Sequence record: PP496439.1
Reading direction: 5' to 3' (one strand)
Length of the DNA stretch: 64,000 bases
Below are positions 370 to 49,636 of this stretch, piece by piece (position 1 is the first letter of the stretch; each line of letters starts with the position of its first letter). The position numbers and the translations under genes are program-made. Below the pieces are notes generated by a model. That model was not told where the DNA came from. It saw only the letters and a list, made by a program, of their open reading frames with translations, and did not search any database.

Positions 370-1056
370 TTATGGCGTCGGGGTCAGATCTATTTCCTTG
401 CGGAACAGTACCTCGCCCTTACCGTTTTCACCTTCATCAAGCTGGGCAACGAAGATAATCTTCGAGCTGTTCTTGAGCTTCGTGTCGTACTTGCCCCCAT
501 CACTGGAGACATAACCGTGGACAGTGATGTCTACGTTGAACACGAACGCCGATACGTCCTGACCCGCCTTCGACTTGGGAGGCAATGTCAGTTCACCACC
601 GACTTGAGACTCAATCGTGAACGGGATACCTCGGTACTCCAGCGTGAAATCCAGCAGGCTGAAATGCTGCATGAACTTCGCGTCACTGATGAACTTTAGC
701 GCCTTCAGGTAATCGTCGGTAGCGAACTCCAGAACCATACCCATTGTAACCGGGATGATACTGATTGCGTACTCTCGATCCCCCTCGTTGATGGCAAAGC
801 GATTAACAATCCCTCGCGCTGTCACATTGGGGCGGTGTCGATTGGAATCACCTACGGTGCCGTAAGTCAGATAAGCGAAAGGGAACGTGGGTGCCTTTTC
901 CCTTTTCTGAACGAACACATCGTAAGCTTCTTCCCGCGTTCGAATCATGACGCTGCCTTTAGCTAGGTCCAGCCCTTCTTCGACACGACGGCATACACCC
1001 GCCAAGACGAACACCTCGATGGGCTTGATCCTTGTACTTGCTGAAGACTTAGCCAT
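370..1056 (-). CDS. Putative neck/tail-completion virion protein
   Basis: 228 aa with a GAGG SD, between capsid and sheath genes. Function inferred from synteny only. Confidence 0.5.
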   Translation of the reverse strand: MAKSSASTRIKPIEVFVLAGVCRRVEEGLDLAKGSVMIRTREEAYDVFVQKREKAPTFPFAYLTYGTVGDSNRHRPNVTARGIVNRFAINEGDREYAISIIPVTMGMVLEFATDDYLKALKFISDAKFMQHFSLLDFTLEYRGIPFTIESQVGGELTLPPKSKAGQDVSAFVFNVDITVHGYVSSDGGKYDTKLKNSSKIIFVAQLDEGENGKGEVLFRKEIDLTPTP

Positions 1057-1067
1057 TTTCTACCTCG

Positions 1068-1103
1068 AAAAAAGGGTGGGTGGGCGGTAACACCCACCCA
1101 CCC
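1068..1103 (-). terminator. Intrinsic terminator after the major capsid gene
   Basis: GGGTGGGTG/CACCCACCC stem followed by a T-tract on the minus strand. Confidence 0.8.
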
Positions 1104-1125
1104 TATATCACCTGACGTGCTGTGG

Positions 1126-2214
1126 TTACTGGCGGATAGCCTTGGTCACAGTGCGAGAGTTGATGATGGACATCGCGGTCAGCTGGCTCATGGTCCAACC
1201 ACGACCTGGGAAGCGCTCGGTGGTCTCGTCGATAGGGCGAGCCTCGATGCCATCACGGTCGGAGTACACACCATGGTTCTCTGGCGAGGAAACCACGTAC
1301 ATCTCGCCACGGCCCAGCACCTTGTGCTGCGAATGACGGAACTGGTCAGTGATCACTTCCAGGCCGTACACGTTGCCGATGTTGCCGGTTTGAATCAGCT
1401 CTTCGGCGTACGAGGTGGCGTTGAAAGTGTTGACCCAGCTTTCTTCGCTGATGATGTCGGTCAGGATGTCCGACGAGATCAACCAGAATGCCGCTGGCAG
1501 GCCCCACTGGGTGATGTTACTCACCATGTTGGCCAGAGCGCGGGTGGTCACTTGACCGGCGAGGATGGTCTGCTCGTTGGCTACGCCGACCGACGCATCG
1601 GCCAGACGTTTCCACAGGCGGTCTTCCGCAACCATGAACGCTTCCAGCGTGGAGATGTACGTACGGTCGAGCAGAGTGGCCGGGCCGCGAGCCAGGTCTT
1701 TCTGTTCGATGTACGGACGCGCTTGGAGGTAAAACTCTTGCGGGTAGTACACGTTGTCGCGAACCAGGTGGGTCGCAACTTGGGCAGGACCAGTCGAGAG
1801 GACAGCGACGGACTGCTTCATGTCCACGGTGACTTTCGGCTCTTGGCCTTGTTCCAGTTCCATGCGTTGCAGCAGACGACGTGCGAAGCCGTCACGGTTG
1901 CCGGTCACTTGCATCTCGGCGGCGAAAACTTCGCCCAGTGCAACCAGCTCTTCCTTGCTGGCGAATGCGGCTTCAACCATCTCACGCTTGCGAGCGGCAG
2001 CAGCCGAAGCAGTTTCAACCTGCTTCTCGGTGGTCAGCTGGTGGCCGCTCTTGGCCGCAGCTGCGAGGGTCTGGAGCATGCCGAACAGCTCTTTGTTCGA
2101 ACTGGCGTTGAACTCGCCGTTCTGGCCAACCAGCTTACCGCCGCCTGCCATGGACAGTTCGGTGATGATGCTCGGACGGCTGACGGACAGCCCTTTAAGT
2201 TGCAATGCTTTCAT
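1126..2214 (-). CDS. Major capsid protein (HK97-like fold)
   Basis: 362 aa with strong codon bias, a GAGG SD and its own terminator. GFARRLLQ and GNIGNVYGLEVITD segments are HK97-like. Follows the scaffold and decoration genes. Confidence 0.75.
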   Translation of the reverse strand: MKALQLKGLSVSRPSIITELSMAGGGKLVGQNGEFNASSNKELFGMLQTLAAAAKSGHQLTTEKQVETASAAAARKREMVEAAFASKEELVALGEVFAAEMQVTGNRDGFARRLLQRMELEQGQEPKVTVDMKQSVAVLSTGPAQVATHLVRDNVYYPQEFYLQARPYIEQKDLARGPATLLDRTYISTLEAFMVAEDRLWKRLADASVGVANEQTILAGQVTTRALANMVSNITQWGLPAAFWLISSDILTDIISEESWVNTFNATSYAEELIQTGNIGNVYGLEVITDQFRHSQHKVLGRGEMYVVSSPENHGVYSDRDGIEARPIDETTERFPGRGWTMSQLTAMSIINSRTVTKAIRQ

Positions 2215-2277
2215 GAGGTTTTAATCCTGTGCAGGAAAATCAGAAGACCTTGTCTGTATTGATAAGGCTAACTAGCC

Positions 2278-2985
2278 TTACAGCAGGACCAGTTTCAGGA
2301 ACGGATAGCCTTCATCCGGGCCTTTCAGAACAGCGACGCCTTGCAGCACGGTGCCGTTGCCACCGCTGGTGAACAGGCCGTTCGCGCCGAGGGTGACCAC
2401 GGTCTCAGGGGACCAGTCAACGTTGGTGTCGAATTCGGAAGTCGCCAGTTCGCCTTTGGTGATGGCGGTGGTAATCCCGAGGAAAGCGGCGGCGGTGCGA
2501 CCGGCAGACTGTTCGCCTTGCAGCGAAGCAGCTTCTACGACGGTCGGGGTGTAGCGATAGCCAGCCTGAATCGCTTGGTCTTTCTGTGCAGCGTTCAGCG
2601 TGACGGTCTTGCCGTCCGAAGCGAGGCTGAACTTGCCAGCGGTGGCAGCATCACCAGCGGCCAGAGTGGTCTTGGTGCCGTTGGCAGCAGTAGCTACCAG
2701 ACGCAGCGAACCGGCGTCGGCGACAGCCTTGTCCAGCACCAGAGTAGTGCTGTTACGGTTGGCTTCGAAACCTTGCAGCTTCGGCAGGAAGTCCGGGAAC
2801 TGGGTCTGATTGATGTTGATGCCGAAGAAGCGCTCACCGGCAACACCAGTGGAGGGCTTGACTGCCAACTCACCGTCAGCGCCGGTAGTGATAACCAGAG
2901 CGCAACCTTCGTTGGTCAATTCGATCCCTTCCGCCACTTGGACAGGTTGGGATTCGCGCAGATGAACGACGTCGAAACTGAGCAT
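2278..2985 (-). CDS. Putative head decoration/structural protein
   Basis: 235 aa, Ala/Gly/Thr-rich, directly upstream of the capsid gene. Confidence 0.55.
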   Translation of the reverse strand: MLSFDVVHLRESQPVQVAEGIELTNEGCALVITTGADGELAVKPSTGVAGERFFGININQTQFPDFLPKLQGFEANRNSTTLVLDKAVADAGSLRLVATAANGTKTTLAAGDAATAGKFSLASDGKTVTLNAAQKDQAIQAGYRYTPTVVEAASLQGEQSAGRTAAAFLGITTAITKGELATSEFDTNVDWSPETVVTLGANGLFTSGGNGTVLQGVAVLKGPDEGYPFLKLVLL

Positions 2986-3046
2986 GGTACGTTCCTCAAA
3001 GGAAGGATAGATAAAAACGGATGACTGTCTCGGGTTGAATCAACCC

Positions 3047-4576
3047 TTAACTGATGCGGAACAGTCCGCCTTGAGCGAGTTCACGCACACGCGAGTTACC
3101 CTTCTGAACAGGTTCATTCAGGAAGGAAGCGGTGGTTACCTGGCGCAACGGGGTCTCGAGTTGGTTTTCCAGCTGCGCAGTAGAAGCCTGACGGCCATTG
3201 CTGCGAGTCGAGGAACCTACCGGAGTGGTGGAAGCGATGGTTTCCGCCAGATCATTCAGGCTGCTCGGGTCACGGGCTGCCAGTGTCTGAGCCAGCGCGA
3301 GGACGTTTTGGTTATGTTCGTCTTCGGTTTCGGCCAAAGCGCTCTCAACCATGGCTTGCGCGTTCTGTACACCGGCGGTGGTCAGATCGGCAATCAGGCG
3401 TTCCTTCACTTTGTGTGGGGTGTTGCGGAAGAACCCACGGGTCATACCAGCTGTCGCCAGCTGAAGGCCATGCAGCAGTCGTTCGGTCTGATCGCCAACG
3501 GTGTCGGCGACTTCGGCGGCAGCGACAGCCTTAGCCTTTTCTTGCACGAATGCCATTGCCATCGCGGCAGGGGCCTTGAAGCTGTTACGCTGGAAGCCGT
3601 AGCTGGCCAGAGTTGCGTCCAAGCCGTCCTTGTTGAACGTCTGCGCGATTGCTTCCATGTACGCTGGCTCGCCGAAGATATCGGCGTTGGCGGTTTCTGC
3701 GGTCTTGTGCAGGACAGCCACGGTCTGATCGTTGACGTTAGCCAAGATCTTGCCGTTCAGCGGGATGAATTCAGCAGTCGCGTCTTCACTCAGGCCAACC
3801 GAGGACAGCGCTTCGAGAACGTCGATGTTCATATCTTCGGGCTCGTCACATTGGTCGGGATTCTGCGTGGACTGGATGACTTCGGCTTCTTCAACCGGTT
3901 CGTCTTCCGACTCCTCTTCTTCCTCGTCATCAGCTTCGGCGGATGCAACCACCGGCTTCTGCTTCGGCATGATGATCATCGGATTGTCCTCGGCGGAAGC
4001 TTCTTCCTCCAAGTCCTCGTCAGACTCATTCGATTCGTCGTCTTCCAGTTCTTCGTCGTCGGCGCTGGTGTCGTCATCGCTGAGATCCGAATCGTCTTCC
4101 GACTCTTCTTCCTCGGCGCTGGCTTCCTCGGCGGGTTGATCGCCGTCCCATGCCCAATCGGCGTTCGCATCTTCTTCGTCGGTGGCAGTGGTATCATCAT
4201 CTGCACCAGCGAGAGTTACGTTGGGGTTCAATACCATTCCCGTACCGCATTCAACACAGCAGATCTCTACGTGGCCTTCTTTGTTCACTGGCATTTGCGC
4301 CAGCTCTTCATCGAACATCACGTTAGCCACGGTGCACTGACGGCACTGCGCGCTGGTGAGACTATCTTCTGCTTCCGTCTGGTTAAAGACGGAAGCAGTG
4401 ATTGCCTCGGCACGCTGTTTCATGGCTGGACTGCCGCAGTGACCGCAGAACGGATCGCACCCCGCCAACGCTACCGTTTCCTCTTTGCAGTGACCGCACT
4501 GGTATGAAGCCAGTACAGCCTGCTTGAGGCTACGCATGGTTGGGGCGTGAGAAGCGATCATGGTGAGCTTCGGCAT
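3047..4576 (-). CDS. Putative prohead scaffold/core protein with Cys-rich N-terminus and acidic linker
   Basis: Start revised to ATG 4576 (GAGGAG SD). Has CxxC pairs, a long Asp/Glu tract and a helical C-terminus. Lies upstream of the decoration and capsid genes. Confidence 0.55.
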   Translation of the reverse strand: MPKLTMIASHAPTMRSLKQAVLASYQCGHCKEETVALAGCDPFCGHCGSPAMKQRAEAITASVFNQTEAEDSLTSAQCRQCTVANVMFDEELAQMPVNKEGHVEICCVECGTGMVLNPNVTLAGADDDTTATDEEDANADWAWDGDQPAEEASAEEEESEDDSDLSDDDTSADDEELEDDESNESDEDLEEEASAEDNPMIIMPKQKPVVASAEADDEEEEESEDEPVEEAEVIQSTQNPDQCDEPEDMNIDVLEALSSVGLSEDATAEFIPLNGKILANVNDQTVAVLHKTAETANADIFGEPAYMEAIAQTFNKDGLDATLASYGFQRNSFKAPAAMAMAFVQEKAKAVAAAEVADTVGDQTERLLHGLQLATAGMTRGFFRNTPHKVKERLIADLTTAGVQNAQAMVESALAETEDEHNQNVLALAQTLAARDPSSLNDLAETIASTTPVGSSTRSNGRQASTAQLENQLETPLRQVTTASFLNEPVQKGNSRVRELAQGGLFRIS

Positions 4577-4903
4577 GCGAAGTGCTCCTCTTGCTGTCAA
4601 TGGGCTGCTACACACTATAAGCATGAGCAGATCTTCGAGCAGGCCACCTCGACGGCCCCTGCTACGGTAAACTCGGATTCACCCCTCCACGCGTATATAA
4701 CGTTTTGGGAACAATTCAAATTACATACGACCAGAGTGCCATGGTGTCCATACCTGCGTCAAAACGCCCGTTTGCCATCATGTCGGGATATGCCCAGCCA
4801 TATGAGTGCTAAGTCATTGATTACCTTGACAATTAATTAGGGGGTATGTGGCCCCCTAATTCATGGAAATTAAGGTATTTTGGCTATATCTGCGTCAAAG
4901 TGC

Positions 4904-4932
4904 TTGACAAACGCCGCCAGGCACCGTATACT
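4904..4932 (+). promoter_or_regulatory. Consensus-like sigma70 promoter
   Basis: TTGACA (4904-4909), 17-bp spacer, TATACT (4927-4932). Confidence 0.85.
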
Positions 4933-4995
4933 GCACGGGCGGGCTACTATTCCAGCCCGCTACGTCCATGCCCACGGGGGCACCAAGGAACCAAC

Positions 4996-5559: not shown

Positions 5560-8346
5560 TTAGGCAAAGTCTTTCTGTGCCAGCACCAATGGTACGCCGA
5601 CAGTATTCAGTGCTATCTGGGTGAACTCCTTCAATTCTGATCTGGTCAGCTTCCGGCTCAGCATCACCCCATCGTGCTCTTGTGCCACTACGATGTCTTT
5701 GTGTCGCATGTTGAACTCTATCATCACCGCTTGCTCCATACCGCAGGTGATGAAGTGCAGCAGCTTCGACTTCTCCTTTTGTGTCGTCCACCCATTCAGC
5801 ATCTTGTCCGTATAGAAGAAGGCCACTGACCCCAGCGCATTGCGAACGCTCACTGCGCTGGCGGTAGCATTGTCTGGATCAAGTCCAGCATCCTTGATTG
5901 ATCTGGACAGCGACTTGTACAGGAAGTAGTTCTGCTTGGCGATCAGGTCTCGATTGACCGGCAGCTTGACGTGTTCAGTTACCTTGTAGTCAGGGTGCGC
6001 AAGGATCATGCTGGGCAATGCCTGCATCGTCCTAATCACGGGGAAGATCAACCGGTTGGTGGTGTAGATCAAAGCGATTGCCAGTTCCATCATCTTAATC
6101 TTGAGGGCTTGCACGTGGCTCTCATTCAACTCCAGTTCAATCGGCGCAACCAGACCACGGATCAGTTTGTCTATGGTGTCGGGCACCACGGAAGATTTCA
6201 GGATGGACTCATGCGATGTCTTGAGGCTGGACCCGTACATGACGGACAGGAACATCAGCTTGCAGACTCCATCGATAACCCGGATGAACTCCCTCTCCTT
6301 GCGCCACGTTTGACCCATCGTCTGCCCCGCGCTTTTCCATACCTGATGCAGCGCCAGTCGGTCATTCCATCTTGACTCACTTCCAGACCACTTCGGTGCG
6401 CCGTATACCCCAGCTCTCCATGGGTTCCGTACCATGACCAGCGCCGACTCCAGCAGTCCTTTGAATCCAGAATCCTCCATCTCAGTCAGCACATGATCCG
6501 TCCACGTCTTGGATTCGTACATTCCGAAGATGGTCAACGCACTATCCACGTCCCGGTCCGTGAGAAACACCTTCCCGTATTCGTCTATCGTCTGGACCAG
6601 TTCCTTGCGATACTTCTTGACCAGCCCACCGATCAGCATCGGGTGGCAAGACTTGACATCGTAGTTGACGTACCCACTCTTGGTGAGGATCACCTGCTTG
6701 AGTTGGTTGGGCAGTGAACCAAAGCCCACCGGGGAGTTTATCCGGGGCGAGCGCAAGGTGGTGAAGTGATGTGCACGGTGCATTACTATCTGGTTGTGGC
6801 GGTCGCTGCTTCCTTGCTGACACCCCAAGTTCTCCGGGTTGATCATGCGGGCCAGCGTACGGAAGGCGCCGGAGGATATGGCATCACCTGACGTGTGGTG
6901 CATCCAGCTCAGCTCCGCAAGCAGGTCGTTGACGGGTAAGCGCACACTCTTGGTGGACAACATGCGTATGTATGCCTTCACATTGACCGGAACAACTGGC
7001 CGGGTGGACAGGTTTATGTTGTCGCTGATCTCCTTGTACGTCGGGTTGTTCACCACACAAGATTGCACCATGGAGACACGGCGTAACATCGTGCACGCCT
7101 TGATCGGCACGTTCTTATCATGGAACATGTACAGCTTGCCCGGCTGGCCGGTCAGGTTATCGTTCGCCACCAGAGACTCACTGTAGGGCAGCTGAGAACT
7201 GAATACCATGACAGCCTGCCCTCGTTCCGCGAACGCGTAGATCGCATTGGGCAGTACCCGGTTGCTACCCTTCAGATTGGTTAGCCAGCGGCCCAGCGGT
7301 TTAACGTCACGAGGCCGGCCCATCAAACGCCCATGCAGGTAGGCATCAACCTTATCCATGTACGAGTCAACGAACTGGGTGACCACAGGACCAGGTTCGA
7401 ACGTGAACGTCTTGTGCTTCCAGTAATCTGCTTCCGTGGTTACGGCCATCAGCCCCATGGTCTCCAGCACAGCGCGCACGGTATCCCAGTGATACGTCAT
7501 CTGACCTTTCTTCGATCCTTCGATGTTCCGCCAGTTGATCAGATTGTTGAACCGTTTTTCACCTTGATGCGAGCCGAGCCCGTAGCCTTCCTTGACCTGA
7601 TCCTTCTTGATCGCGAACTGGGTATCGTGGCTATGATCCAGATCAACGTGAAGGAACCGGGAAACAGACCGAGCGTGGTTCAGTTCCATGGGGAACGCCA
7701 GCTTGTTGGTCAGGTCCTTGGGGTTGAACGCAGGGTTCCATTGAAAGCCGTCCTTCGAGGTTCCCTTGTGTACGGCGGACACTAGATGCCGGGCCATTGA
7801 GTCGCGGGAGTCGAAGTGGCCTTTGTCGTTCACCTTATCCAGCAGCATGGGATATGCCACGACAAGGCGGGCGATCAGGAAGGCGAAGCAGTAGGCAGCA
7901 GACGGACCGGGCGCACAGTTGCGCTCCGCCATCTTCTGGAGGAAGGTTTCGTATTGATCAAGGATGAAGTAGCCCAGACCGGGGGTGACCGCTACCGGCA
8001 GGCCGACGACGCGGCTGTCCAGCCAGCTTTTGCCGCTAGGGTACAGGTTATGCTTGGGGTTCAGCGAAGGTTCAACCACCATCATCCGCACATAGGGGAC
8101 GTAGGACTGCACCCATTCAACGTTGGATTGATCTTTAGCTTCGGGGAAGTCACGGGTTACCTTTCCCACTTTGGCAATGAGATCAGTATTGAAGCGCCCT
8201 ACATCCTTTACCTCAGGGGCCAGTGCGGGGTTTAGTCGAGCCGTAGCCTTGATGATGGGTATTTGGTCATACACGGGATACAAGTCTAGGGGCTTGGACA
8301 GTATGCCTGCATATTCCTTTTCCGAGAGTGGGGTATAGTCAGCCAT
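5560..8346 (-). CDS. Divergent family-A-like (DNA/RNA polymerase superfamily) protein
   Basis: 928 aa. C-terminal motif A-like NYDVKSCHP, motif B-like KLMFLSVMYG (K-x7-YG), motif C-like QEHDG. No 3'-5' exonuclease motifs recognised. Confidence 0.65.
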   Translation of the reverse strand: MADYTPLSEKEYAGILSKPLDLYPVYDQIPIIKATARLNPALAPEVKDVGRFNTDLIAKVGKVTRDFPEAKDQSNVEWVQSYVPYVRMMVVEPSLNPKHNLYPSGKSWLDSRVVGLPVAVTPGLGYFILDQYETFLQKMAERNCAPGPSAAYCFAFLIARLVVAYPMLLDKVNDKGHFDSRDSMARHLVSAVHKGTSKDGFQWNPAFNPKDLTNKLAFPMELNHARSVSRFLHVDLDHSHDTQFAIKKDQVKEGYGLGSHQGEKRFNNLINWRNIEGSKKGQMTYHWDTVRAVLETMGLMAVTTEADYWKHKTFTFEPGPVVTQFVDSYMDKVDAYLHGRLMGRPRDVKPLGRWLTNLKGSNRVLPNAIYAFAERGQAVMVFSSQLPYSESLVANDNLTGQPGKLYMFHDKNVPIKACTMLRRVSMVQSCVVNNPTYKEISDNINLSTRPVVPVNVKAYIRMLSTKSVRLPVNDLLAELSWMHHTSGDAISSGAFRTLARMINPENLGCQQGSSDRHNQIVMHRAHHFTTLRSPRINSPVGFGSLPNQLKQVILTKSGYVNYDVKSCHPMLIGGLVKKYRKELVQTIDEYGKVFLTDRDVDSALTIFGMYESKTWTDHVLTEMEDSGFKGLLESALVMVRNPWRAGVYGAPKWSGSESRWNDRLALHQVWKSAGQTMGQTWRKEREFIRVIDGVCKLMFLSVMYGSSLKTSHESILKSSVVPDTIDKLIRGLVAPIELELNESHVQALKIKMMELAIALIYTTNRLIFPVIRTMQALPSMILAHPDYKVTEHVKLPVNRDLIAKQNYFLYKSLSRSIKDAGLDPDNATASAVSVRNALGSVAFFYTDKMLNGWTTQKEKSKLLHFITCGMEQAVMIEFNMRHKDIVVAQEHDGVMLSRKLTRSELKEFTQIALNTVGVPLVLAQKDFA

Positions 8347-8395
8347 TGGATAGCTCGCGTATTACCGGAGTGAATGGAATTGGACGTTATCAGCC

Positions 8396-8402
8396 CATTT
8401 AC
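8396..8402 (-). promoter_or_regulatory. GTAAATR putative phage promoter element
   Basis: GTAAATG about 50 nt upstream of the ATG at 8346. Confidence 0.5.
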
Positions 8403-8810
8403 CAGACTATATACAGAGTATCTTATGGGGGTTAAAAAGGACCATCTTGCAATTATTTGGGTCATTAATTCCCTTCCAGGCCATAAACCTCTATCTGTGG
8501 ATACGGGGGTAGTTAGCCCTAGATACATCCCTATTACCTGTGTATATTGCCCATGTAGACTCTATTCCCCTATCGGGAAGTATAACCTCGAAAAAGGTTC
8601 CTAGCTTGCATGGGCTGGCCCACCCACCCCGTGGCCCACCCGACCGCCCGGTTAAGGCCATACCTAGGGATTCCTTTCTCCCAGAGGGACCCCCAGCTGC
8701 CCATCCTTCCCCTGCTCCTTCCTTTCCTTCATCATCTACACCCACCCAGCTATTGACTTACCATCTAGTGATCCTCCTTCCTCCAGCTTCTACATAGGCA
8801 GTTAGCTTCC

Positions 8811-9072
8811 CCATGCCTCTAAGCTCCTCCGCTTCATCATGCACTTATGCTCTGTAGTACTGATTCCCCACATGCCCGTGACTTATGCTCTGGTGTCAGT
8901 ATTCCCAGCCTCCCAGGTGAAAAGGGTGTCCATGCGCTGGGGAGTTGTCCGGGGAATAGCGCCCGTGAATAGGGCTTCCAGGCGTGCGATATGGGGAGTT
9001 TTTCGGGGATGGATGAGTCAGTATGGCGGGGAATGGGGAATGAAGCGCCTGCGAGCTTGTAGGAGCCCATGG
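8811..9072. repeat. Degenerate inverted repeat (~70-nt arms) in the largest non-coding region
   Basis: Blocks CCATG, AAGCTC, GCTTCAT, TACTGAYTC and CATSCCCG at 8811-8879 recur in order on the reverse complement of ~9004-9072. Confidence 0.55.
8843..8892 (+). repeat. 12-bp direct repeat ACTTATGCTCTG, two copies
   Basis: Copies at 8843-8854 and 8881-8892, each followed by ATTCCC. Confidence 0.7.
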
Positions 9073-9119
9073 TTATTGACTGGATATGCGGGACTGGGGC
9101 GGGGTTTCCTGCGGAGGTG

Positions 9120-9153
9120 AAAAAGCCCGCACGGCTTGGGACCGATACGGGCT
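9120..9153 (-). terminator. Intrinsic terminator
   Basis: AGCCCG/CGGGCT stem with a T-tract on the minus strand, just past the stop at 9160. Confidence 0.7.
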
Positions 9154-9159
9154 CTGGTA

Positions 9160-9684
9160 TTACTTGACGTACTCGGGATTCGGACGTTGCCTATCCACAC
9201 CTGCCGTACAGAACCTGCGGGTGTCCGACTGATCCTCTGGTACGTCCGGCGTACCTTTCATCCTCATGCGATACATGCGGATCATCTCATGCAGTTCGCC
9301 ACCGGGCTTCAATGCGTCTGGGTCATCCGCGTGAATGAAGCCCAGCATGTCGATAGCGTCTATCTCAAAGCCCAGTTCCTCAGACGGTATCAGCTGGAAC
9401 TCCTGATACACGCCGGGGATCGGAGCTTGCGGTCGGTACAGCGCCACCACTCTGCCTTTGCCCGGCTCGACGCCGAGTGCGCTTTCGTCCCGGCCCACCC
9501 ACATCTCACGGGAGCCCGGCACACTAGCTGGCACGTATTCGATAGAACCTTCAGGGTAATGCGCGGAGAACGTGGCAACGAACCACCGCGAACTGCCCTT
9601 GTAGCAGCGGAACGGTTTGGTCTCTCTGGCGTGGCGGGTCAGTGGGTTGTTCAACGGTGTAGATTGTTCGACGATCAGTGACAT
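9160..9684 (-). CDS. Hypothetical protein
   Basis: 174 aa with a GAGG SD, in the minus-strand gene run. Confidence 0.7.
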   Translation of the reverse strand: MSLIVEQSTPLNNPLTRHARETKPFRCYKGSSRWFVATFSAHYPEGSIEYVPASVPGSREMWVGRDESALGVEPGKGRVVALYRPQAPIPGVYQEFQLIPSEELGFEIDAIDMLGFIHADDPDALKPGGELHEMIRMYRMRMKGTPDVPEDQSDTRRFCTAGVDRQRPNPEYVK

Positions 9685-9718
9685 GATGTGTTCCTCTTCG
9701 GGGTAGTGGGTGCTGCGG

Positions 9719-10045
9719 TTAGTCGTTGAATTCTTTGGGATCGAAGCCGTGCCGTTCGCACCAATCTCGGCGCTCCACGCTCAAGTCGCGGCCCTGATCT
9801 TTTTGCAATGCGCCCCGGCGGACCCACTCGACCAGGTCCCCCATACGCTCCCAGCGCTGGAAGCCTTGGTAGAAGTCCTCCAGATCCGCAGTGTTGTCCT
9901 TGATCAGTTGCGCGATGTGGACGGAAGGAGATGTCAGCGTCATCAGCTCGGCGTGGTCTTTCGCGAACTGGGCCAGCTTGTCGCCCACCCACTTGTCAGC
10001 TTTGATCTGCAATTCGGTTGGGCCAAGTTCTGCTTCGTCGATCAT
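9719..10045 (-). CDS. Hypothetical protein
   Basis: 108 aa with a GAGG SD. Confidence 0.7.
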   Translation of the reverse strand: MIDEAELGPTELQIKADKWVGDKLAQFAKDHAELMTLTSPSVHIAQLIKDNTADLEDFYQGFQRWERMGDLVEWVRRGALQKDQGRDLSVERRDWCERHGFDPKEFND

Positions 10046-10057
10046 GGTGTGTTCCTC

Positions 10058-11039: not shown

Positions 11040-11135
11040 GGTGTGGCTTCCTATTGGACAGTGGGGCGGCAGTGTGCCGCACGTGCATGATATCAGACGG
11101 GAACTATGGGTGTCAACACCCGACCGCCGCAGGTG

Positions 11136-11170
11136 AAAAAGCCCACGCAGCGGTTAGGCAGGTGGGCTTT
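11136..11170 (-). terminator. Intrinsic terminator with CTAACC loop
   Basis: GCCCAC/GTGGGC stem plus TTTTT on the minus strand. Confidence 0.75.
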
Positions 11171-11172
11171 GG

Positions 11173-11463
11173 TCAAACTAATCTCAATACCGGCTTGGGT
11201 TTTTCACCTAAATCAACGGACGCGTGCAGTTCCAGATCAAGTGCGAGCCGTATCACGTCTGAGTAGGGTTCACGCGAATGCGCCCAAACGTCTGGCAGTG
11301 TCGTACGATAGATGTGGACAATCGTGTGAAGCTCTTCCTTGGCATAGACACCTGCCCGCATCAACTGAGTAACCCGTGCACGCACCTTGGGTGTGATCCA
11401 CGTGATAAGATCCTCATACGTTCCGGTCCAGATCATCACCTGATGATTAACGCGCTTCGCCAC
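11173..11463 (-). CDS. Hypothetical protein
   Basis: 96 aa with a GGAGG SD, overlapping the upstream gene. Confidence 0.65.
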   Translation of the reverse strand: MAKRVNHQVMIWTGTYEDLITWITPKVRARVTQLMRAGVYAKEELHTIVHIYRTTLPDVWAHSREPYSDVIRLALDLELHASVDLGEKPKPVLRLV

Positions 11464-48949: not shown

Positions 48950-48958
48950 GATCCCCGA

Positions 48959-49636
48959 GTGAATATATTCTTCGTCCACGCTGATCCTGTTATTGCCGCA
49001 AGCATGCTCTGCGACCAGCATGTGACTAAGATGATAACCGAGTCAATCCAGATGCTGTGTACGGCGCACCGATGGTTCGGTAACGAAGATATGCCGTATG
49101 CCTCGATGAACCCGAACCATCGGTGCAACATCTGGGTCCGGGAGTCCACTGAGAACTATCGGTGGTTATGGCGGCACGCCCATGCGCTGGCGCTGGTGGC
49201 AGCGTCCCGATACGGGGCTGTACGCTCGCAGGCGGTGACTTTGTTGTCCCGACTGATCGATGCCCCGGCTGGCGTCGAACGCGGCGCCTTGACGATCCCA
49301 GCGGCTGCTATAAGTGAGCCGCCCGGTTCCCCAATCCCACCGGAGTACTTGCAAGCATGGCGGGAGAGTGTGGTGTGCTTCGAGTCTGCCGTCGTTGCTT
49401 ATCGCCAATTCTATGTTCAACAGAAGTCGGTGTTTGCTCGTTGGTCTGGTTCGGCACCCGCATGGTATATCCAAGGTTTGCGGCAGTACAGACTCATGCA
49501 CCGACTTCGTGAACGAGACCCTAAACGACCGTGGCCGCGAGGCATGACCAAACCTGATACCTCAGTGCAATTTCGGTCGCACCCTACCCTAAGTGATTGG
49601 AAGCACTTCCCTAATGAACAAGAGGACCTTGTATGA
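48959..49636 (+). CDS. Pyrimidine-dimer DNA glycosylase (DenV/Pyr_excise-like family)
   Basis: MNIFFVHADP...LCDQHVTKMITESIQML...NHRCNIWVRES..NYRWL...AYRQFY..K. Confidence 0.75.
   Translation: MNIFFVHADPVIAASMLCDQHVTKMITESIQMLCTAHRWFGNEDMPYASMNPNHRCNIWVRESTENYRWLWRHAHALALVAASRYGAVRSQAVTLLSRLIDAPAGVERGALTIPAAAISEPPGSPIPPEYLQAWRESVVCFESAVVAYRQFYVQQKSVFARWSGSAPAWYIQGLRQYRLMHRLRERDPKRPWPRGMTKPDTSVQFRSHPTLSDWKHFPNEQEDLV

What the first reader, a model, noticed from the sequence alone, without database searches (positions are those of the whole stretch)
8347..9119. ~770-bp non-coding region with a skew flip and degenerate inverted repeat: candidate origin or packaging/terminus site
Seen: the plus strand is C/T-rich from ~8600 to ~8920 and G-rich from ~8935 to ~9115. 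Five sequence blocks at 8811-8879 recur in order, inverted, at ~9004-9072, centred near 8940. A 12-bp direct repeat (8843, 8881) lies in the left arm. Flanking genes are both on the minus strand, so transcription direction does not explain the flip, and a terminator at 9120 insulates the region. Inference: a bidirectional origin with symmetric protein-binding sites, a pac site, or a structured ncRNA.
Basis: partly seen in the sequence, partly recalled or inferred. Interest (0 to 1): 0.65.

Follow-up and report, generated by a model that had tools for sequence, protein, structure and literature searches.

The report
Conserved skew-flip gap in jumbo phage
The largest gene-free gap of a 202-kb Pseudomonas putida phage holds a conserved, single-copy DNA element whose two halves have the most lopsided base composition in the whole genome; it is not the inverted repeat or folded RNA first suspected, and it may be a replication start site or a transcription barrier, which only experiments can settle.

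Summary
The window is the last 64 kb of Pseudomonas phage vB_PpuM-Amme-1, a 202-kb P. putida jumbo myophage. The 813-nt gap at 8347-9159 is the largest annotated intergenic region and is non-coding.

Confirmed:
- The skew flip. The gap holds both the most C-rich and the most G-rich 200-nt windows of the genome.
- The 12-bp direct repeat, plus a second 18-nt direct repeat in the right arm.
- The minus-strand terminator next to 9120.

Not confirmed:
- The "degenerate inverted repeat". Arm-to-arm complementarity is no better than arm-wise shuffles.
- Any structured RNA. There is no Rfam hit, no excess folding stability on either strand, and no covariation.

New findings:
- The block 8783-9166 is an island of conservation. 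Its core is 96.5% identical in the divergent phage Peetri, between variable modules on both sides.
- It is single-copy and has no relatives outside the genus.
- The syntenic gaps of two distant Vibrio jumbo phages are also skew-flip outliers, with the same polarity.

Best reading (about 0.3): a unique cis-acting DNA site, most likely a replication-initiation zone. Main rival (about 0.2): a terminator plus Rho-type insulator between the early/middle and late operons. Function remains untested, and no reads or RNA data were available.

The parts
9119..9150 (-). Intrinsic terminator of the upstream (early/middle) minus-strand operon: a 9-bp-plus hairpin at 9124-9150 followed by TTTTT on the minus strand.
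   Evidence: Sequence read. Folded as a hairpin (window 9040-9159 minus). The same hairpin sequence recurs at about 6 other sites of the genome. Invariant in all 9 phages.
8946..9115 (.). Right arm: G-run-rich on the plus strand (G 41.8%, C 17.1%). It carries an 18-nt direct repeat (8938-8955 and 8992-9009, 54-nt spacing) and GGGGAAT at 8951, 9027 and 9035. This is the most conserved part of the gap.
   Evidence: repeat: 1 of 200 shuffles as good; top G4Hunter window of the genome, +0.85 over 180 nt; 96.5% identical to Peetri, top 5% of 200-nt windows.
8927..8945 (.). Skew switch point and indel hot spot. There are four different length and sequence variants among the 9 phages.
   Evidence: Alignment A1 columns 644-672.
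8783..8926 (.). Conserved part of the left arm: C/T-rich on the plus strand. It carries a tandem direct repeat with a 38-nt period (8843-8868 and 8881-8906; 12 nt exact, 26 nt at 77%).
   Evidence: about 90-92% identical to Peetri; 0 of 200 shuffles as good.
8600..8782 (.). Lineage-specific part of the left arm: the extreme C-rich, G-poor tract. The best 78-nt C/G window of the genome (C 37, G 5) starts at 8690. TGGCCCACCC occurs twice, at 8616 and 8632. This part is diverged and partly deleted in Peetri, together with the 928-aa gene.
8347..8599 (.). AT-richer tract (GC about 0.42, lowest 0.5% of 150-nt windows in the genome). It holds the likely promoter of the 928-aa gene: GGTAAATG on the minus strand at 8396-8403, 56 nt upstream of the ATG.
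   Evidence: the motif recurs 25-110 nt upstream of about 25 phage genes; weak sigma-70-like hits in both directions.
5560..8346 (-). 928-aa ORFan immediately downstream of the gap. Its only relatives are in this phage genus. The Peetri ortholog is 32-38% identical, while the rest of the genome is about 80-92% identical at DNA level.
9160..9684 (-). 174-aa gene ending the upstream operon. The gene content here varies among the 9 phages.

Best explanation
The gap holds a single-copy, sequence-conserved, cis-acting DNA site at the border between the early/middle operon and the late structural operon. My best guess is that it is a replication-initiation zone.

Shown:
- Two arms whose outward-reading strands are the most G-run-rich stretches of the genome.
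- A pair of direct repeats in each arm.
- An adjacent AT-rich tract.
- Conservation of the block 8783-9166 as an island between two variable modules.
- The same skew polarity (C-rich then G-rich on either strand, the sign seen at origins) in the syntenic gap of two distant Vibrio jumbo phages.

Inferred:
- The repeats are binding sites for an initiator. This may be the adjacent fast-evolving 928-aa protein, whose gene co-diverges with the left part of the gap.
- The AT-rich tract melts.
- Transcripts running outward through the G-rich arms would form stable RNA-DNA hybrids. The phage's own RNase H and family-A DNA polymerase could turn these into primers, as at ColE1 or T4 oriF/oriG.
For: - Largest intergenic gap of the genome.
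- Skew extremes and flip rank first in 202 kb.
- Both arms are the top G4Hunter windows on their strands.
- The 8343-8520 tract is in the lowest 0.5% for GC.
- Direct repeats exceed shuffles.
- GGGGAAT/ATTCCCC: 5 of the 20 genome copies lie in the gap, with orientation switching at the centre.
- The block is single-copy in the genome.
- The core is 96.5% identical to Peetri, although the 928-aa gene and 8347-8782 are unalignable and the genes to the right vary.
- The analogous gaps upstream of a large ORFan in Vibrio phages are also outliers with the same sign: GR11A flip ranks first, and GR7B flip is in the top 0.05%.
- The phage encodes RNase H, a family-A DNA polymerase, a DnaB-like helicase and a primase.
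Against: - There is no replication data of any kind.
- Cumulative GC skew of the genome shows no V at this site.
- Each repeat has only two copies, not an iteron array.
- No promoter was found inside the conserved block.
- DnaA-box-like sites are not enriched.
- The gap sits beside structural genes, not in the main replication module.
- Another gap next to the polymerase region has a cleaner binding-site array.
- The 928-aa protein could not be assigned any fold or family.
- The same composition is equally what Rho loading sites look like.
- Conservation is judged mainly against one divergent genome.
Confidence: 0.3

Rival explanations
1. Transcription insulator. The intrinsic terminator at 9119-9150 is backed by Rho loading (rut-like) tracts for RNA entering from either side. 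This would keep early/middle transcription out of the late 928-aa/capsid operon, which has its own GGTAAATG promoter at about 8400.
For: - RNA entering on the minus strand is C 41.8%, G 17.1% over 170 nt directly after the terminator. RNA entering on the plus strand is C 38.5%, G 17.7% over 330 nt. These include the best and fifth-best 78-nt C/G windows of the genome.
- These C-rich RNAs are almost unstructured, at -10 to -12 kcal/mol per 120 nt, and fold no better than shuffles; the plus-strand tract folds markedly worse (z = +1.95), the minus-strand one about as expected (z = +0.55).
- The site is a co-directional early-to-late boundary.
- The C-rich tract after a terminator is also present in both Vibrio phages.
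Against: - Rut sites need composition, not sequence, so 96.5% identity and conserved direct repeats are unexplained.
- Other operon borders of this genome manage with 60-130-nt gaps and the common terminator.
- No plus-strand gene feeds transcripts into the left arm.
- Whether Rho is used during this infection is unknown.
Confidence: 0.2
2. Protein-binding control region for transcription, for example operators or an enhancer for the phage sigma factor or a timing regulator. The direct repeats and GGGGAAT motifs would be the binding sites.
For: Conserved direct repeats and motif enrichment. Position directly upstream of the first late operon. The phage encodes its own sigma factor.
Against: The block lies 380-770 nt from the nearest promoter-like motif. 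The motifs occur nowhere else as a regulon would. This reading does not explain the extreme skew over 500 nt.
Confidence: 0.15
3. A non-coding RNA gene, on either strand, that acts through sequence rather than a stable fold. One example is a sponge rich in GGA or anti-Shine-Dalgarno-like motifs.
For: Conserved, non-coding, about 340 nt. The purine-rich minus-strand RNA of the left arm carries about 17 GGA motifs by my count on the sequence. A weak sigma-70-like plus-strand promoter lies at 8520-8548.
Against: - No Rfam match at E <= 10 in the gap.
- Folding z-scores are about 0 on both strands, and there is no covariation.
- No promoter or terminator brackets the block. The plus-strand -10 is hit by a substitution in two relatives.
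- The motif counts are what the composition alone predicts.
Confidence: 0.1
4. Packaging (pac) site or a physical genome end.
For: Unique, conserved, repeat-bearing non-coding site. The genome termini are unknown.
Against: It lies about 56 kb from the terminase genes. The genomes assembled as circles with no reliable termini reported (PMC7616413). T4-like replication and recombination genes suggest headful packaging without a pac site.
Confidence: 0.05
5. A relic without present function, such as a decayed gene or local mutational bias, that looks conserved because of recent recombination among these phages.
For: Identity between Amme-1 and Peetri varies from 78% to 99.5% by segment, so a 96.5% patch could be a recent exchange. 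Among the 8 close relatives the block is no better conserved than the rest of the gap.
Against: It does not explain rank-first skew on both arms, the repeats, or the recurrence of the skew flip in Vibrio phages with no sequence similarity. Another non-coding gap (11040-11446) is only about 81% identical.
Confidence: 0.1

Closest known systems
R-loop-primed origins (ColE1 ori; phage T4 oriF/oriG)
   Same: A non-coding zone of several hundred nt with G-rich and C-rich stretches that favour a persistent RNA-DNA hybrid, next to an easily melted tract. The replicon has RNase H and a family-A polymerase.
   Different: No promoter was found that would feed the G-rich arms. There is no sequence similarity. 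T4 origins are not strongly skewed (from my own knowledge). Nothing was tested experimentally.
Iteron-type origins next to their initiator gene (phage lambda ori/O, plasmids P1, pSC101)
   Same: Direct repeats, an AT-rich tract, and an adjacent large gene that co-diverges with part of the non-coding region.
   Different: There are only two copies of each repeat, at spacings of 38 and 54 nt. The adjacent protein has no recognisable initiator domain.
Rho-dependent terminators (rut sites such as lambda tR1, trp t')
   Same: C-rich, G-poor, unstructured RNA over more than 78 nt, here for both incoming directions.
   Different: Far longer and far more conserved in sequence than rut sites need to be. 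It is placed after an already good intrinsic terminator and occurs only once in the genome.
Skew-flip gaps of Vibrio phages vB_VcorM_GR11A and GR7B
   Same: A gene-free gap of 750-1100 nt after a terminator and upstream of a large ORFan, lying between a helicase-containing early region and the ATPase/capsid genes. It is an outlier C-to-G skew flip in its own genome.
   Different: No DNA similarity to the Amme-1 element. The G-rich arm is weak in GR7B. Homology of the ORFans rests on a weak C-terminal match (hhalign E 0.004, probability 8%) and on shared columns in a forced alignment.

Membership tests
Structured non-coding RNA (any Rfam family) | Match to a covariance model | tested here: not met
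   cmscan at E <= 10 on 7500-10000, both strands: the only hit is a chance lncRNA match outside the gap. No tRNA or tmRNA in the window.
Structured non-coding RNA (any Rfam family) | Folding energy below shuffles and/or compensatory base changes | tested here: not met
   z = -0.18 (plus) and +0.08 (minus) for the block. Eleven 120-nt windows per strand give z between -1.1 and +1.95. RNAalifold finds 0 and 1 compensatory pairs. No covarying pair sits in a helix. Power is low because the 9 sequences are more than 90% alike.
Inverted repeat / cruciform or symmetric site array | Arm-to-arm complementarity above composition | tested here: not met
   Local alignment scores of 16-17 equal the arm-wise shuffle means. 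MFE against arm-wise shuffles gives z = -1.5 and -1.7.
Iteron-type origin | Array of three or more phased direct repeats | tested here: not met
   There are two significant repeat pairs, each with two copies: 12/26 nt at 38-nt spacing and 18 nt at 54-nt spacing.
Iteron-type origin | Adjacent AT-rich unwinding tract | tested here: met
   8343-8520 has GC 0.42, in the lowest 0.5% of 150-nt windows. The same tract also holds the promoter of the next gene.
Iteron-type origin | Cognate initiator protein encoded nearby | tested here: inconclusive
   The 928-aa neighbour co-diverges with the left part of the gap. It has no family, fold or solved relative.
R-loop origin (T4 oriF/G, ColE1 type) | Promoter directing transcription into the hybrid-forming region | tested here: not met
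   There are no phage-type (GGTAAAT, CTAATTAC) or good sigma-70 promoters in or facing the conserved block.
R-loop origin (T4 oriF/G, ColE1 type) | G-rich non-template strand; RNase H and polymerase to process the primer | tested here: met
   Both outward-reading strands are the top G-run windows of the genome. RNase H is annotated and a family-A polymerase is confirmed by Pfam.
Any replication origin | Replication starts there (copy-number peak, bubble arcs) | not testable with these tools
   No sequencing run was listed for this DNA.
Rho-dependent terminator | C>G, unstructured tract of 78 nt or more on the transcript | tested here: met
Rho-dependent terminator | Rho-dependent 3' ends | not testable with these tools
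   No RNA data.
pac site / genome terminus | Located at or beside the terminase genes; defined DNA ends | tested here: not met
   The terminase is at record 757-3138 and the element at record 146.5-147.4 kb. Termini are unknown and the assemblies are circular.

The most novel reading that the evidence does not exclude
Distant jumbo phage genera (the Pseudomonas Amme-1 group and Vibrio GR11A/GR7B) share an undescribed replication-start module. It would consist of a gene-free zone with an extreme local C-to-G skew flip, paired with a fast-evolving large ORFan that keeps K-x7-Y-G and EHDG motifs reminiscent of family-A/T7-type polymerases and acts on that zone as a dedicated initiator or primer-maker.
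Probability: 0.12. Interest if true: 0.7.

Novelty: new variant of a known kind. Interest (0 to 1): 0.42.

Why it matters
Where and how jumbo phages outside the T4 and phiKZ models start DNA replication, and how they separate their transcription programmes, is largely unknown. This element is a concrete, easily deletable candidate in a phage of the biotechnology host P. putida KT2440. It comes with a simple computational signature, the top-ranked local skew flip in a large gap upstream of a big ORFan, which can be looked for in other jumbo phages. If it proves to be only a strong terminator or insulator, it would still be a useful genetic part. If it is an origin, it would allow phage-dependent replicons and marker-frequency studies.

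Tried and rejected
- **Coding potential:** the 93-aa plus-strand ORF (8839-9120) and the others are interrupted by frameshifts or stops in relatives.
- **Rfam, tRNA and tmRNA:** nothing.
- **Homologs of the element outside the genus:** four exact-pattern scans of viral, metagenome and genome contigs found nothing. blastn against plasmids gave only chance hits.
- **Relatives through the neighbouring ATPase or the 928-aa protein:** nothing in viral or metagenome contigs.
- **Sequencing runs:** none was listed.
- **Whole-genome cumulative skew:** no V or peak at the site.
- **DnaA boxes:** 11 near-matches against 10.5 expected in the window.
- **Identity of the 928-aa protein:**
  - Pfam, PHROGs, NCBIfam and PDB searches (sequence and profile), the word search and the full HMMER search found only its own genus.
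  - AlphaFold2 of the whole protein gave pLDDT 39, and of the C-terminal 389 residues pLDDT 50. Both were too poor to use, and Foldseek found no match.
  - hhalign against the phage's own family-A polymerase gave probability 0.4%.
  - The ESM atlas gave only a sub-threshold DNA_pol_A lead.
  - The PolA/T7-RNAP reading therefore rests on motifs seen by eye (K696-x7-Y704-G705, H891-D892) and is not established.
- **Pairwise covariation scan:** dominated by Peetri-specific substitutions and uninformative.
- **Literature search** for comparable jumbo-phage origins: nothing relevant.

Full report
**Identity and setting**

The window is identical to the last 64 kb of Pseudomonas phage vB_PpuM-Amme-1 (PP496439.1; window position = record position minus 138198). 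This is a 202-kb lytic myophage of P. putida, cluster G3 of the CEPEST collection (PMC7616413). Eight relatives are in GenBank. Seven are 93-95% identical over the region, and Peetri is the divergent one.

The genome has plus-strand genes at 1-68 kb, mostly minus-strand genes at 68-157 kb, and plus-strand genes at 157-202 kb. It encodes its own sigma factor, a family-A DNA polymerase, RNase H, primase, helicases, UvsX and SSB.

The finding is the gap between the 174-aa gene, which ends a long minus-strand operon of small early/middle-type genes, and the 928-aa gene. The 928-aa gene is followed by an ATPase, a virion protein and the major head protein. At 813 nt it is the largest annotated intergenic region of the genome.

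**Checking the observation**

- **Skew flip.** It is real and extreme. The left arm holds the most negative and the right arm the most positive 200-nt GC-skew window of all 202 kb (-0.49 and +0.44; genome sd 0.095). The flip ranks first, with z = 6.6. The arms are also the top G-run (G4Hunter) windows of their strands.
- **Non-coding.** Every ORF of 45 aa or more in the gap is broken by 1-nt indels or a stop in one or more relatives.
- **Direct repeats.** The 12-bp repeat (8843, 8881) exceeds all 200 composition-matched shuffles. It is the core of a 38-nt tandem duplication. The right arm has its own 18-nt repeat (8938, 8992), matched by 1 of 200 shuffles.
- **Terminator.** The terminator next to 9120 is a minus-strand hairpin plus T-run. 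Its sequence recurs at about six other operon ends.
- **Inverted repeat.** This claim fails. Alignment of the left arm with the reverse complement of the right arm scores no better than arm-wise shuffles. The long fold-back predicted for the plus strand (-130 kcal/mol) is what the composition alone gives: z = -0.18 against whole-sequence shuffles and -1.5 against arm-wise shuffles.

**What else the sequence shows**

*Conservation island.* Between Amme-1 and Peetri, the 928-aa gene (all but its last 66 codons) and 8347-8782 cannot be aligned at DNA level; the proteins are 32-38% identical. From 8783 to 9166, identity jumps to 90-96.5%. The 200-nt core is in the top 5% of windows over 40 kb, at the level of the capsid genes. 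Another non-coding gap (11040-11446) is only about 81% identical. To the right of the block, the gene content differs among the nine phages. The block is therefore a conserved island between two variable modules. The indel hot spot at 8927-8945 sits exactly at the skew switch.

*Uniqueness.* Only the terminator part recurs in the genome. No copy was found in viral, metagenome or prokaryote contigs, or in plasmids.

*Motifs.* Five of the genome's 20 copies of ATTCCCC/GGGGAAT lie in the gap. They appear as ATTCCC left of about 8930 and as GGGAAT right of it.

*Promoters.* Two motifs are enriched upstream of phage genes: GGTAAAT(G/A) and CTAATTAC-N3-CAT. One GGTAAATG lies 56 nt upstream of the 928-aa start, inside the AT-rich tract 8347-8599, which is in the lowest 0.5% of the genome for GC. 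Neither motif, nor a convincing sigma-70 promoter, lies in or faces the conserved block.

*RNA structure.* Rfam finds nothing. No 120-nt window on either strand folds better than shuffles. There is no covariation, although the nine sequences give little power. The C-rich RNAs that would be made by transcription entering the gap from either side are almost unstructured, at -10 to -12 kcal/mol per 120 nt.

**Distant comparison**

The nearest phages outside the genus are Vibrio phages GR11A and GR7B (ATPase 40% identical). In both, a 750-1100-nt gene-free gap follows a terminator and precedes a 617-aa ORFan. The gap lies between a helicase-containing region and the ATPase/capsid genes.

Without any DNA similarity to Amme-1, the GR11A gap holds the strongest skew flip of its 195-kb genome (z = 5.3). 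The GR7B gap holds a flip in the top 0.05% of its genome. Both have the same C-then-G polarity. The two Vibrio gaps are themselves barely alignable.

The 617-aa protein aligns weakly with the C-terminus of the 928-aa protein (GMExA...EHDG; hhalign E 0.004 but probability 8%). In a forced four-sequence alignment, K696, G705, G869-M-E, and E890-H-D-G stay invariant. An Erwinia phage relative of the Vibrio protein has no large gap. I take this as moderate evidence that the skew flip is a functional or mechanistic signature rather than an accident of one genome.

**The 928-aa neighbour**

An earlier first-stage note (s1-159383) read this protein as a PolA/T7-RNAP-superfamily protein. By eye it has K-x7-Y-G and HD motifs with T7-RNAP-like spacing. 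Nothing I could run confirms this:
- no Pfam, PHROGs, NCBIfam or PDB match;
- no relatives beyond the genus in 1.8 billion representatives;
- no similarity to the phage's own family-A polymerase;
- two AlphaFold2 models too poor to search, at pLDDT 39 and 50;
- only a sub-threshold atlas lead.

Its function stays open.

**Interpretation**

- **Structured ncRNA and symmetric inverted site array.** The evidence argues against both.
- **pac site.** It could not be tested and is unlikely from position. The genomes were assembled as circles and reordered to the terminase, and no runs were listed.
- **Two readings fit the strand asymmetry equally well**, because the pattern is unchanged by reverse complementation:
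  - **Origin-like site.** Outward-reading strands are G-rich. This is the polarity of replication origins and of R-loop-prone divergent transcription. It fits an initiation zone with an AT-rich melting tract, repeats as binding sites, and RNase H plus PolA for primer processing.
  - **Insulator.** Inward-reading RNAs are C-rich, G-poor and unstructured, which is the textbook make-up of Rho loading sites. It fits a bidirectional insulator behind the intrinsic terminator, at an early-to-late border.
- **Why I rank the origin-like reading first (0.3).** Uniqueness in the genome, sequence-level conservation and conserved direct repeats are expected of a single specific cis site. They are not expected of a composition-driven terminator, and other operon borders here do without such a zone.
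- **Why confidence is low.** There is no promoter, no iteron array, no global skew signal and no data. A second gap near the polymerase genes carries a cleaner binding-site array.
- **Other rivals.** Insulator 0.2; a transcription-control region 0.15; a sequence-acting RNA 0.1; a relic 0.1; pac 0.05.

**Novelty and verdict**

The element belongs to no described family and has no relatives outside one phage genus. Its likely roles are of known kinds. It is a well-defined, testable candidate, not a demonstrated origin. Interest is moderate.

Noticed in passing
window 48950-49632 (record 187148-187830): The second-largest gene-free gap lies in the replication module upstream of the family-A polymerase region. 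It has a perfect 15-nt inverted repeat (49066-49080 / 49112-49126, 31-nt spacer) and a third copy of GAACCATCGGTG at 49153. This looks like a protein-binding site array and is an alternative origin or operator candidate.
   Followed up: partly
whole Amme-1 genome; e.g. window 8396-8403 (-), 18919 (-) and 18940 (+), 14882 (-): Two motifs are strongly enriched upstream of genes: GGTAAAT(G/A), 25-110 nt before about 25 start codons, and CTAATTAC-N3-CAT(G/A), often just after terminators and before structural genes. They are probably two phage promoter classes. Back-to-back GGTAAAT motifs mark the divergent junction at record 157.1 kb.
   Followed up: partly
window 5760-8782 versus Peetri (L010 19128-22238): The 928-aa gene (all but its last 66 codons) plus 436 nt upstream is replaced or hyper-diverged in Peetri. 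The protein is 32-38% identical and 1010 aa long, while the flanks are about 90% identical at DNA level. This is either a module swap or very fast evolution of an ORFan beside the capsid genes.
   Followed up: partly
window 9160-10050 and loci L002, L004-L009: The gene or genes just upstream of the conserved block differ among the nine phages: 174 aa in Amme-1; 96 + 279 aa in Lauda, SKa-4, Aura and Illi-2; 147 or 165 aa in others. This is a small hyperplastic spot.
   Followed up: no
record 35291, 73650, 112304, 134761, 134938, 149326: The terminator hairpin AAAAAGCCCGCACGGC... is reused at several operon ends, so the phage has a family of near-identical intrinsic terminators.
   Followed up: no
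L030 5560-5860 (Vibrio phage GR11A) and L045 2400-2900 (GR7B): The Vibrio phage gaps share only short islands: two to three AGATA repeats, CCTATAAG, and CACAAAAGTGAGTTTTTT..CGTTTTT. They show the same C-then-G skew polarity. GR11A also has a second 1.1-kb gap containing a tRNA-Cys.
   Followed up: partly
window 4625-4995: The 370-nt gap between the ATPase gene and a plus-strand 158-aa gene holds a palindromic pair of CTAATT motifs (4840 minus, 4856 plus). This is probably a pair of divergent promoters.
   Followed up: no
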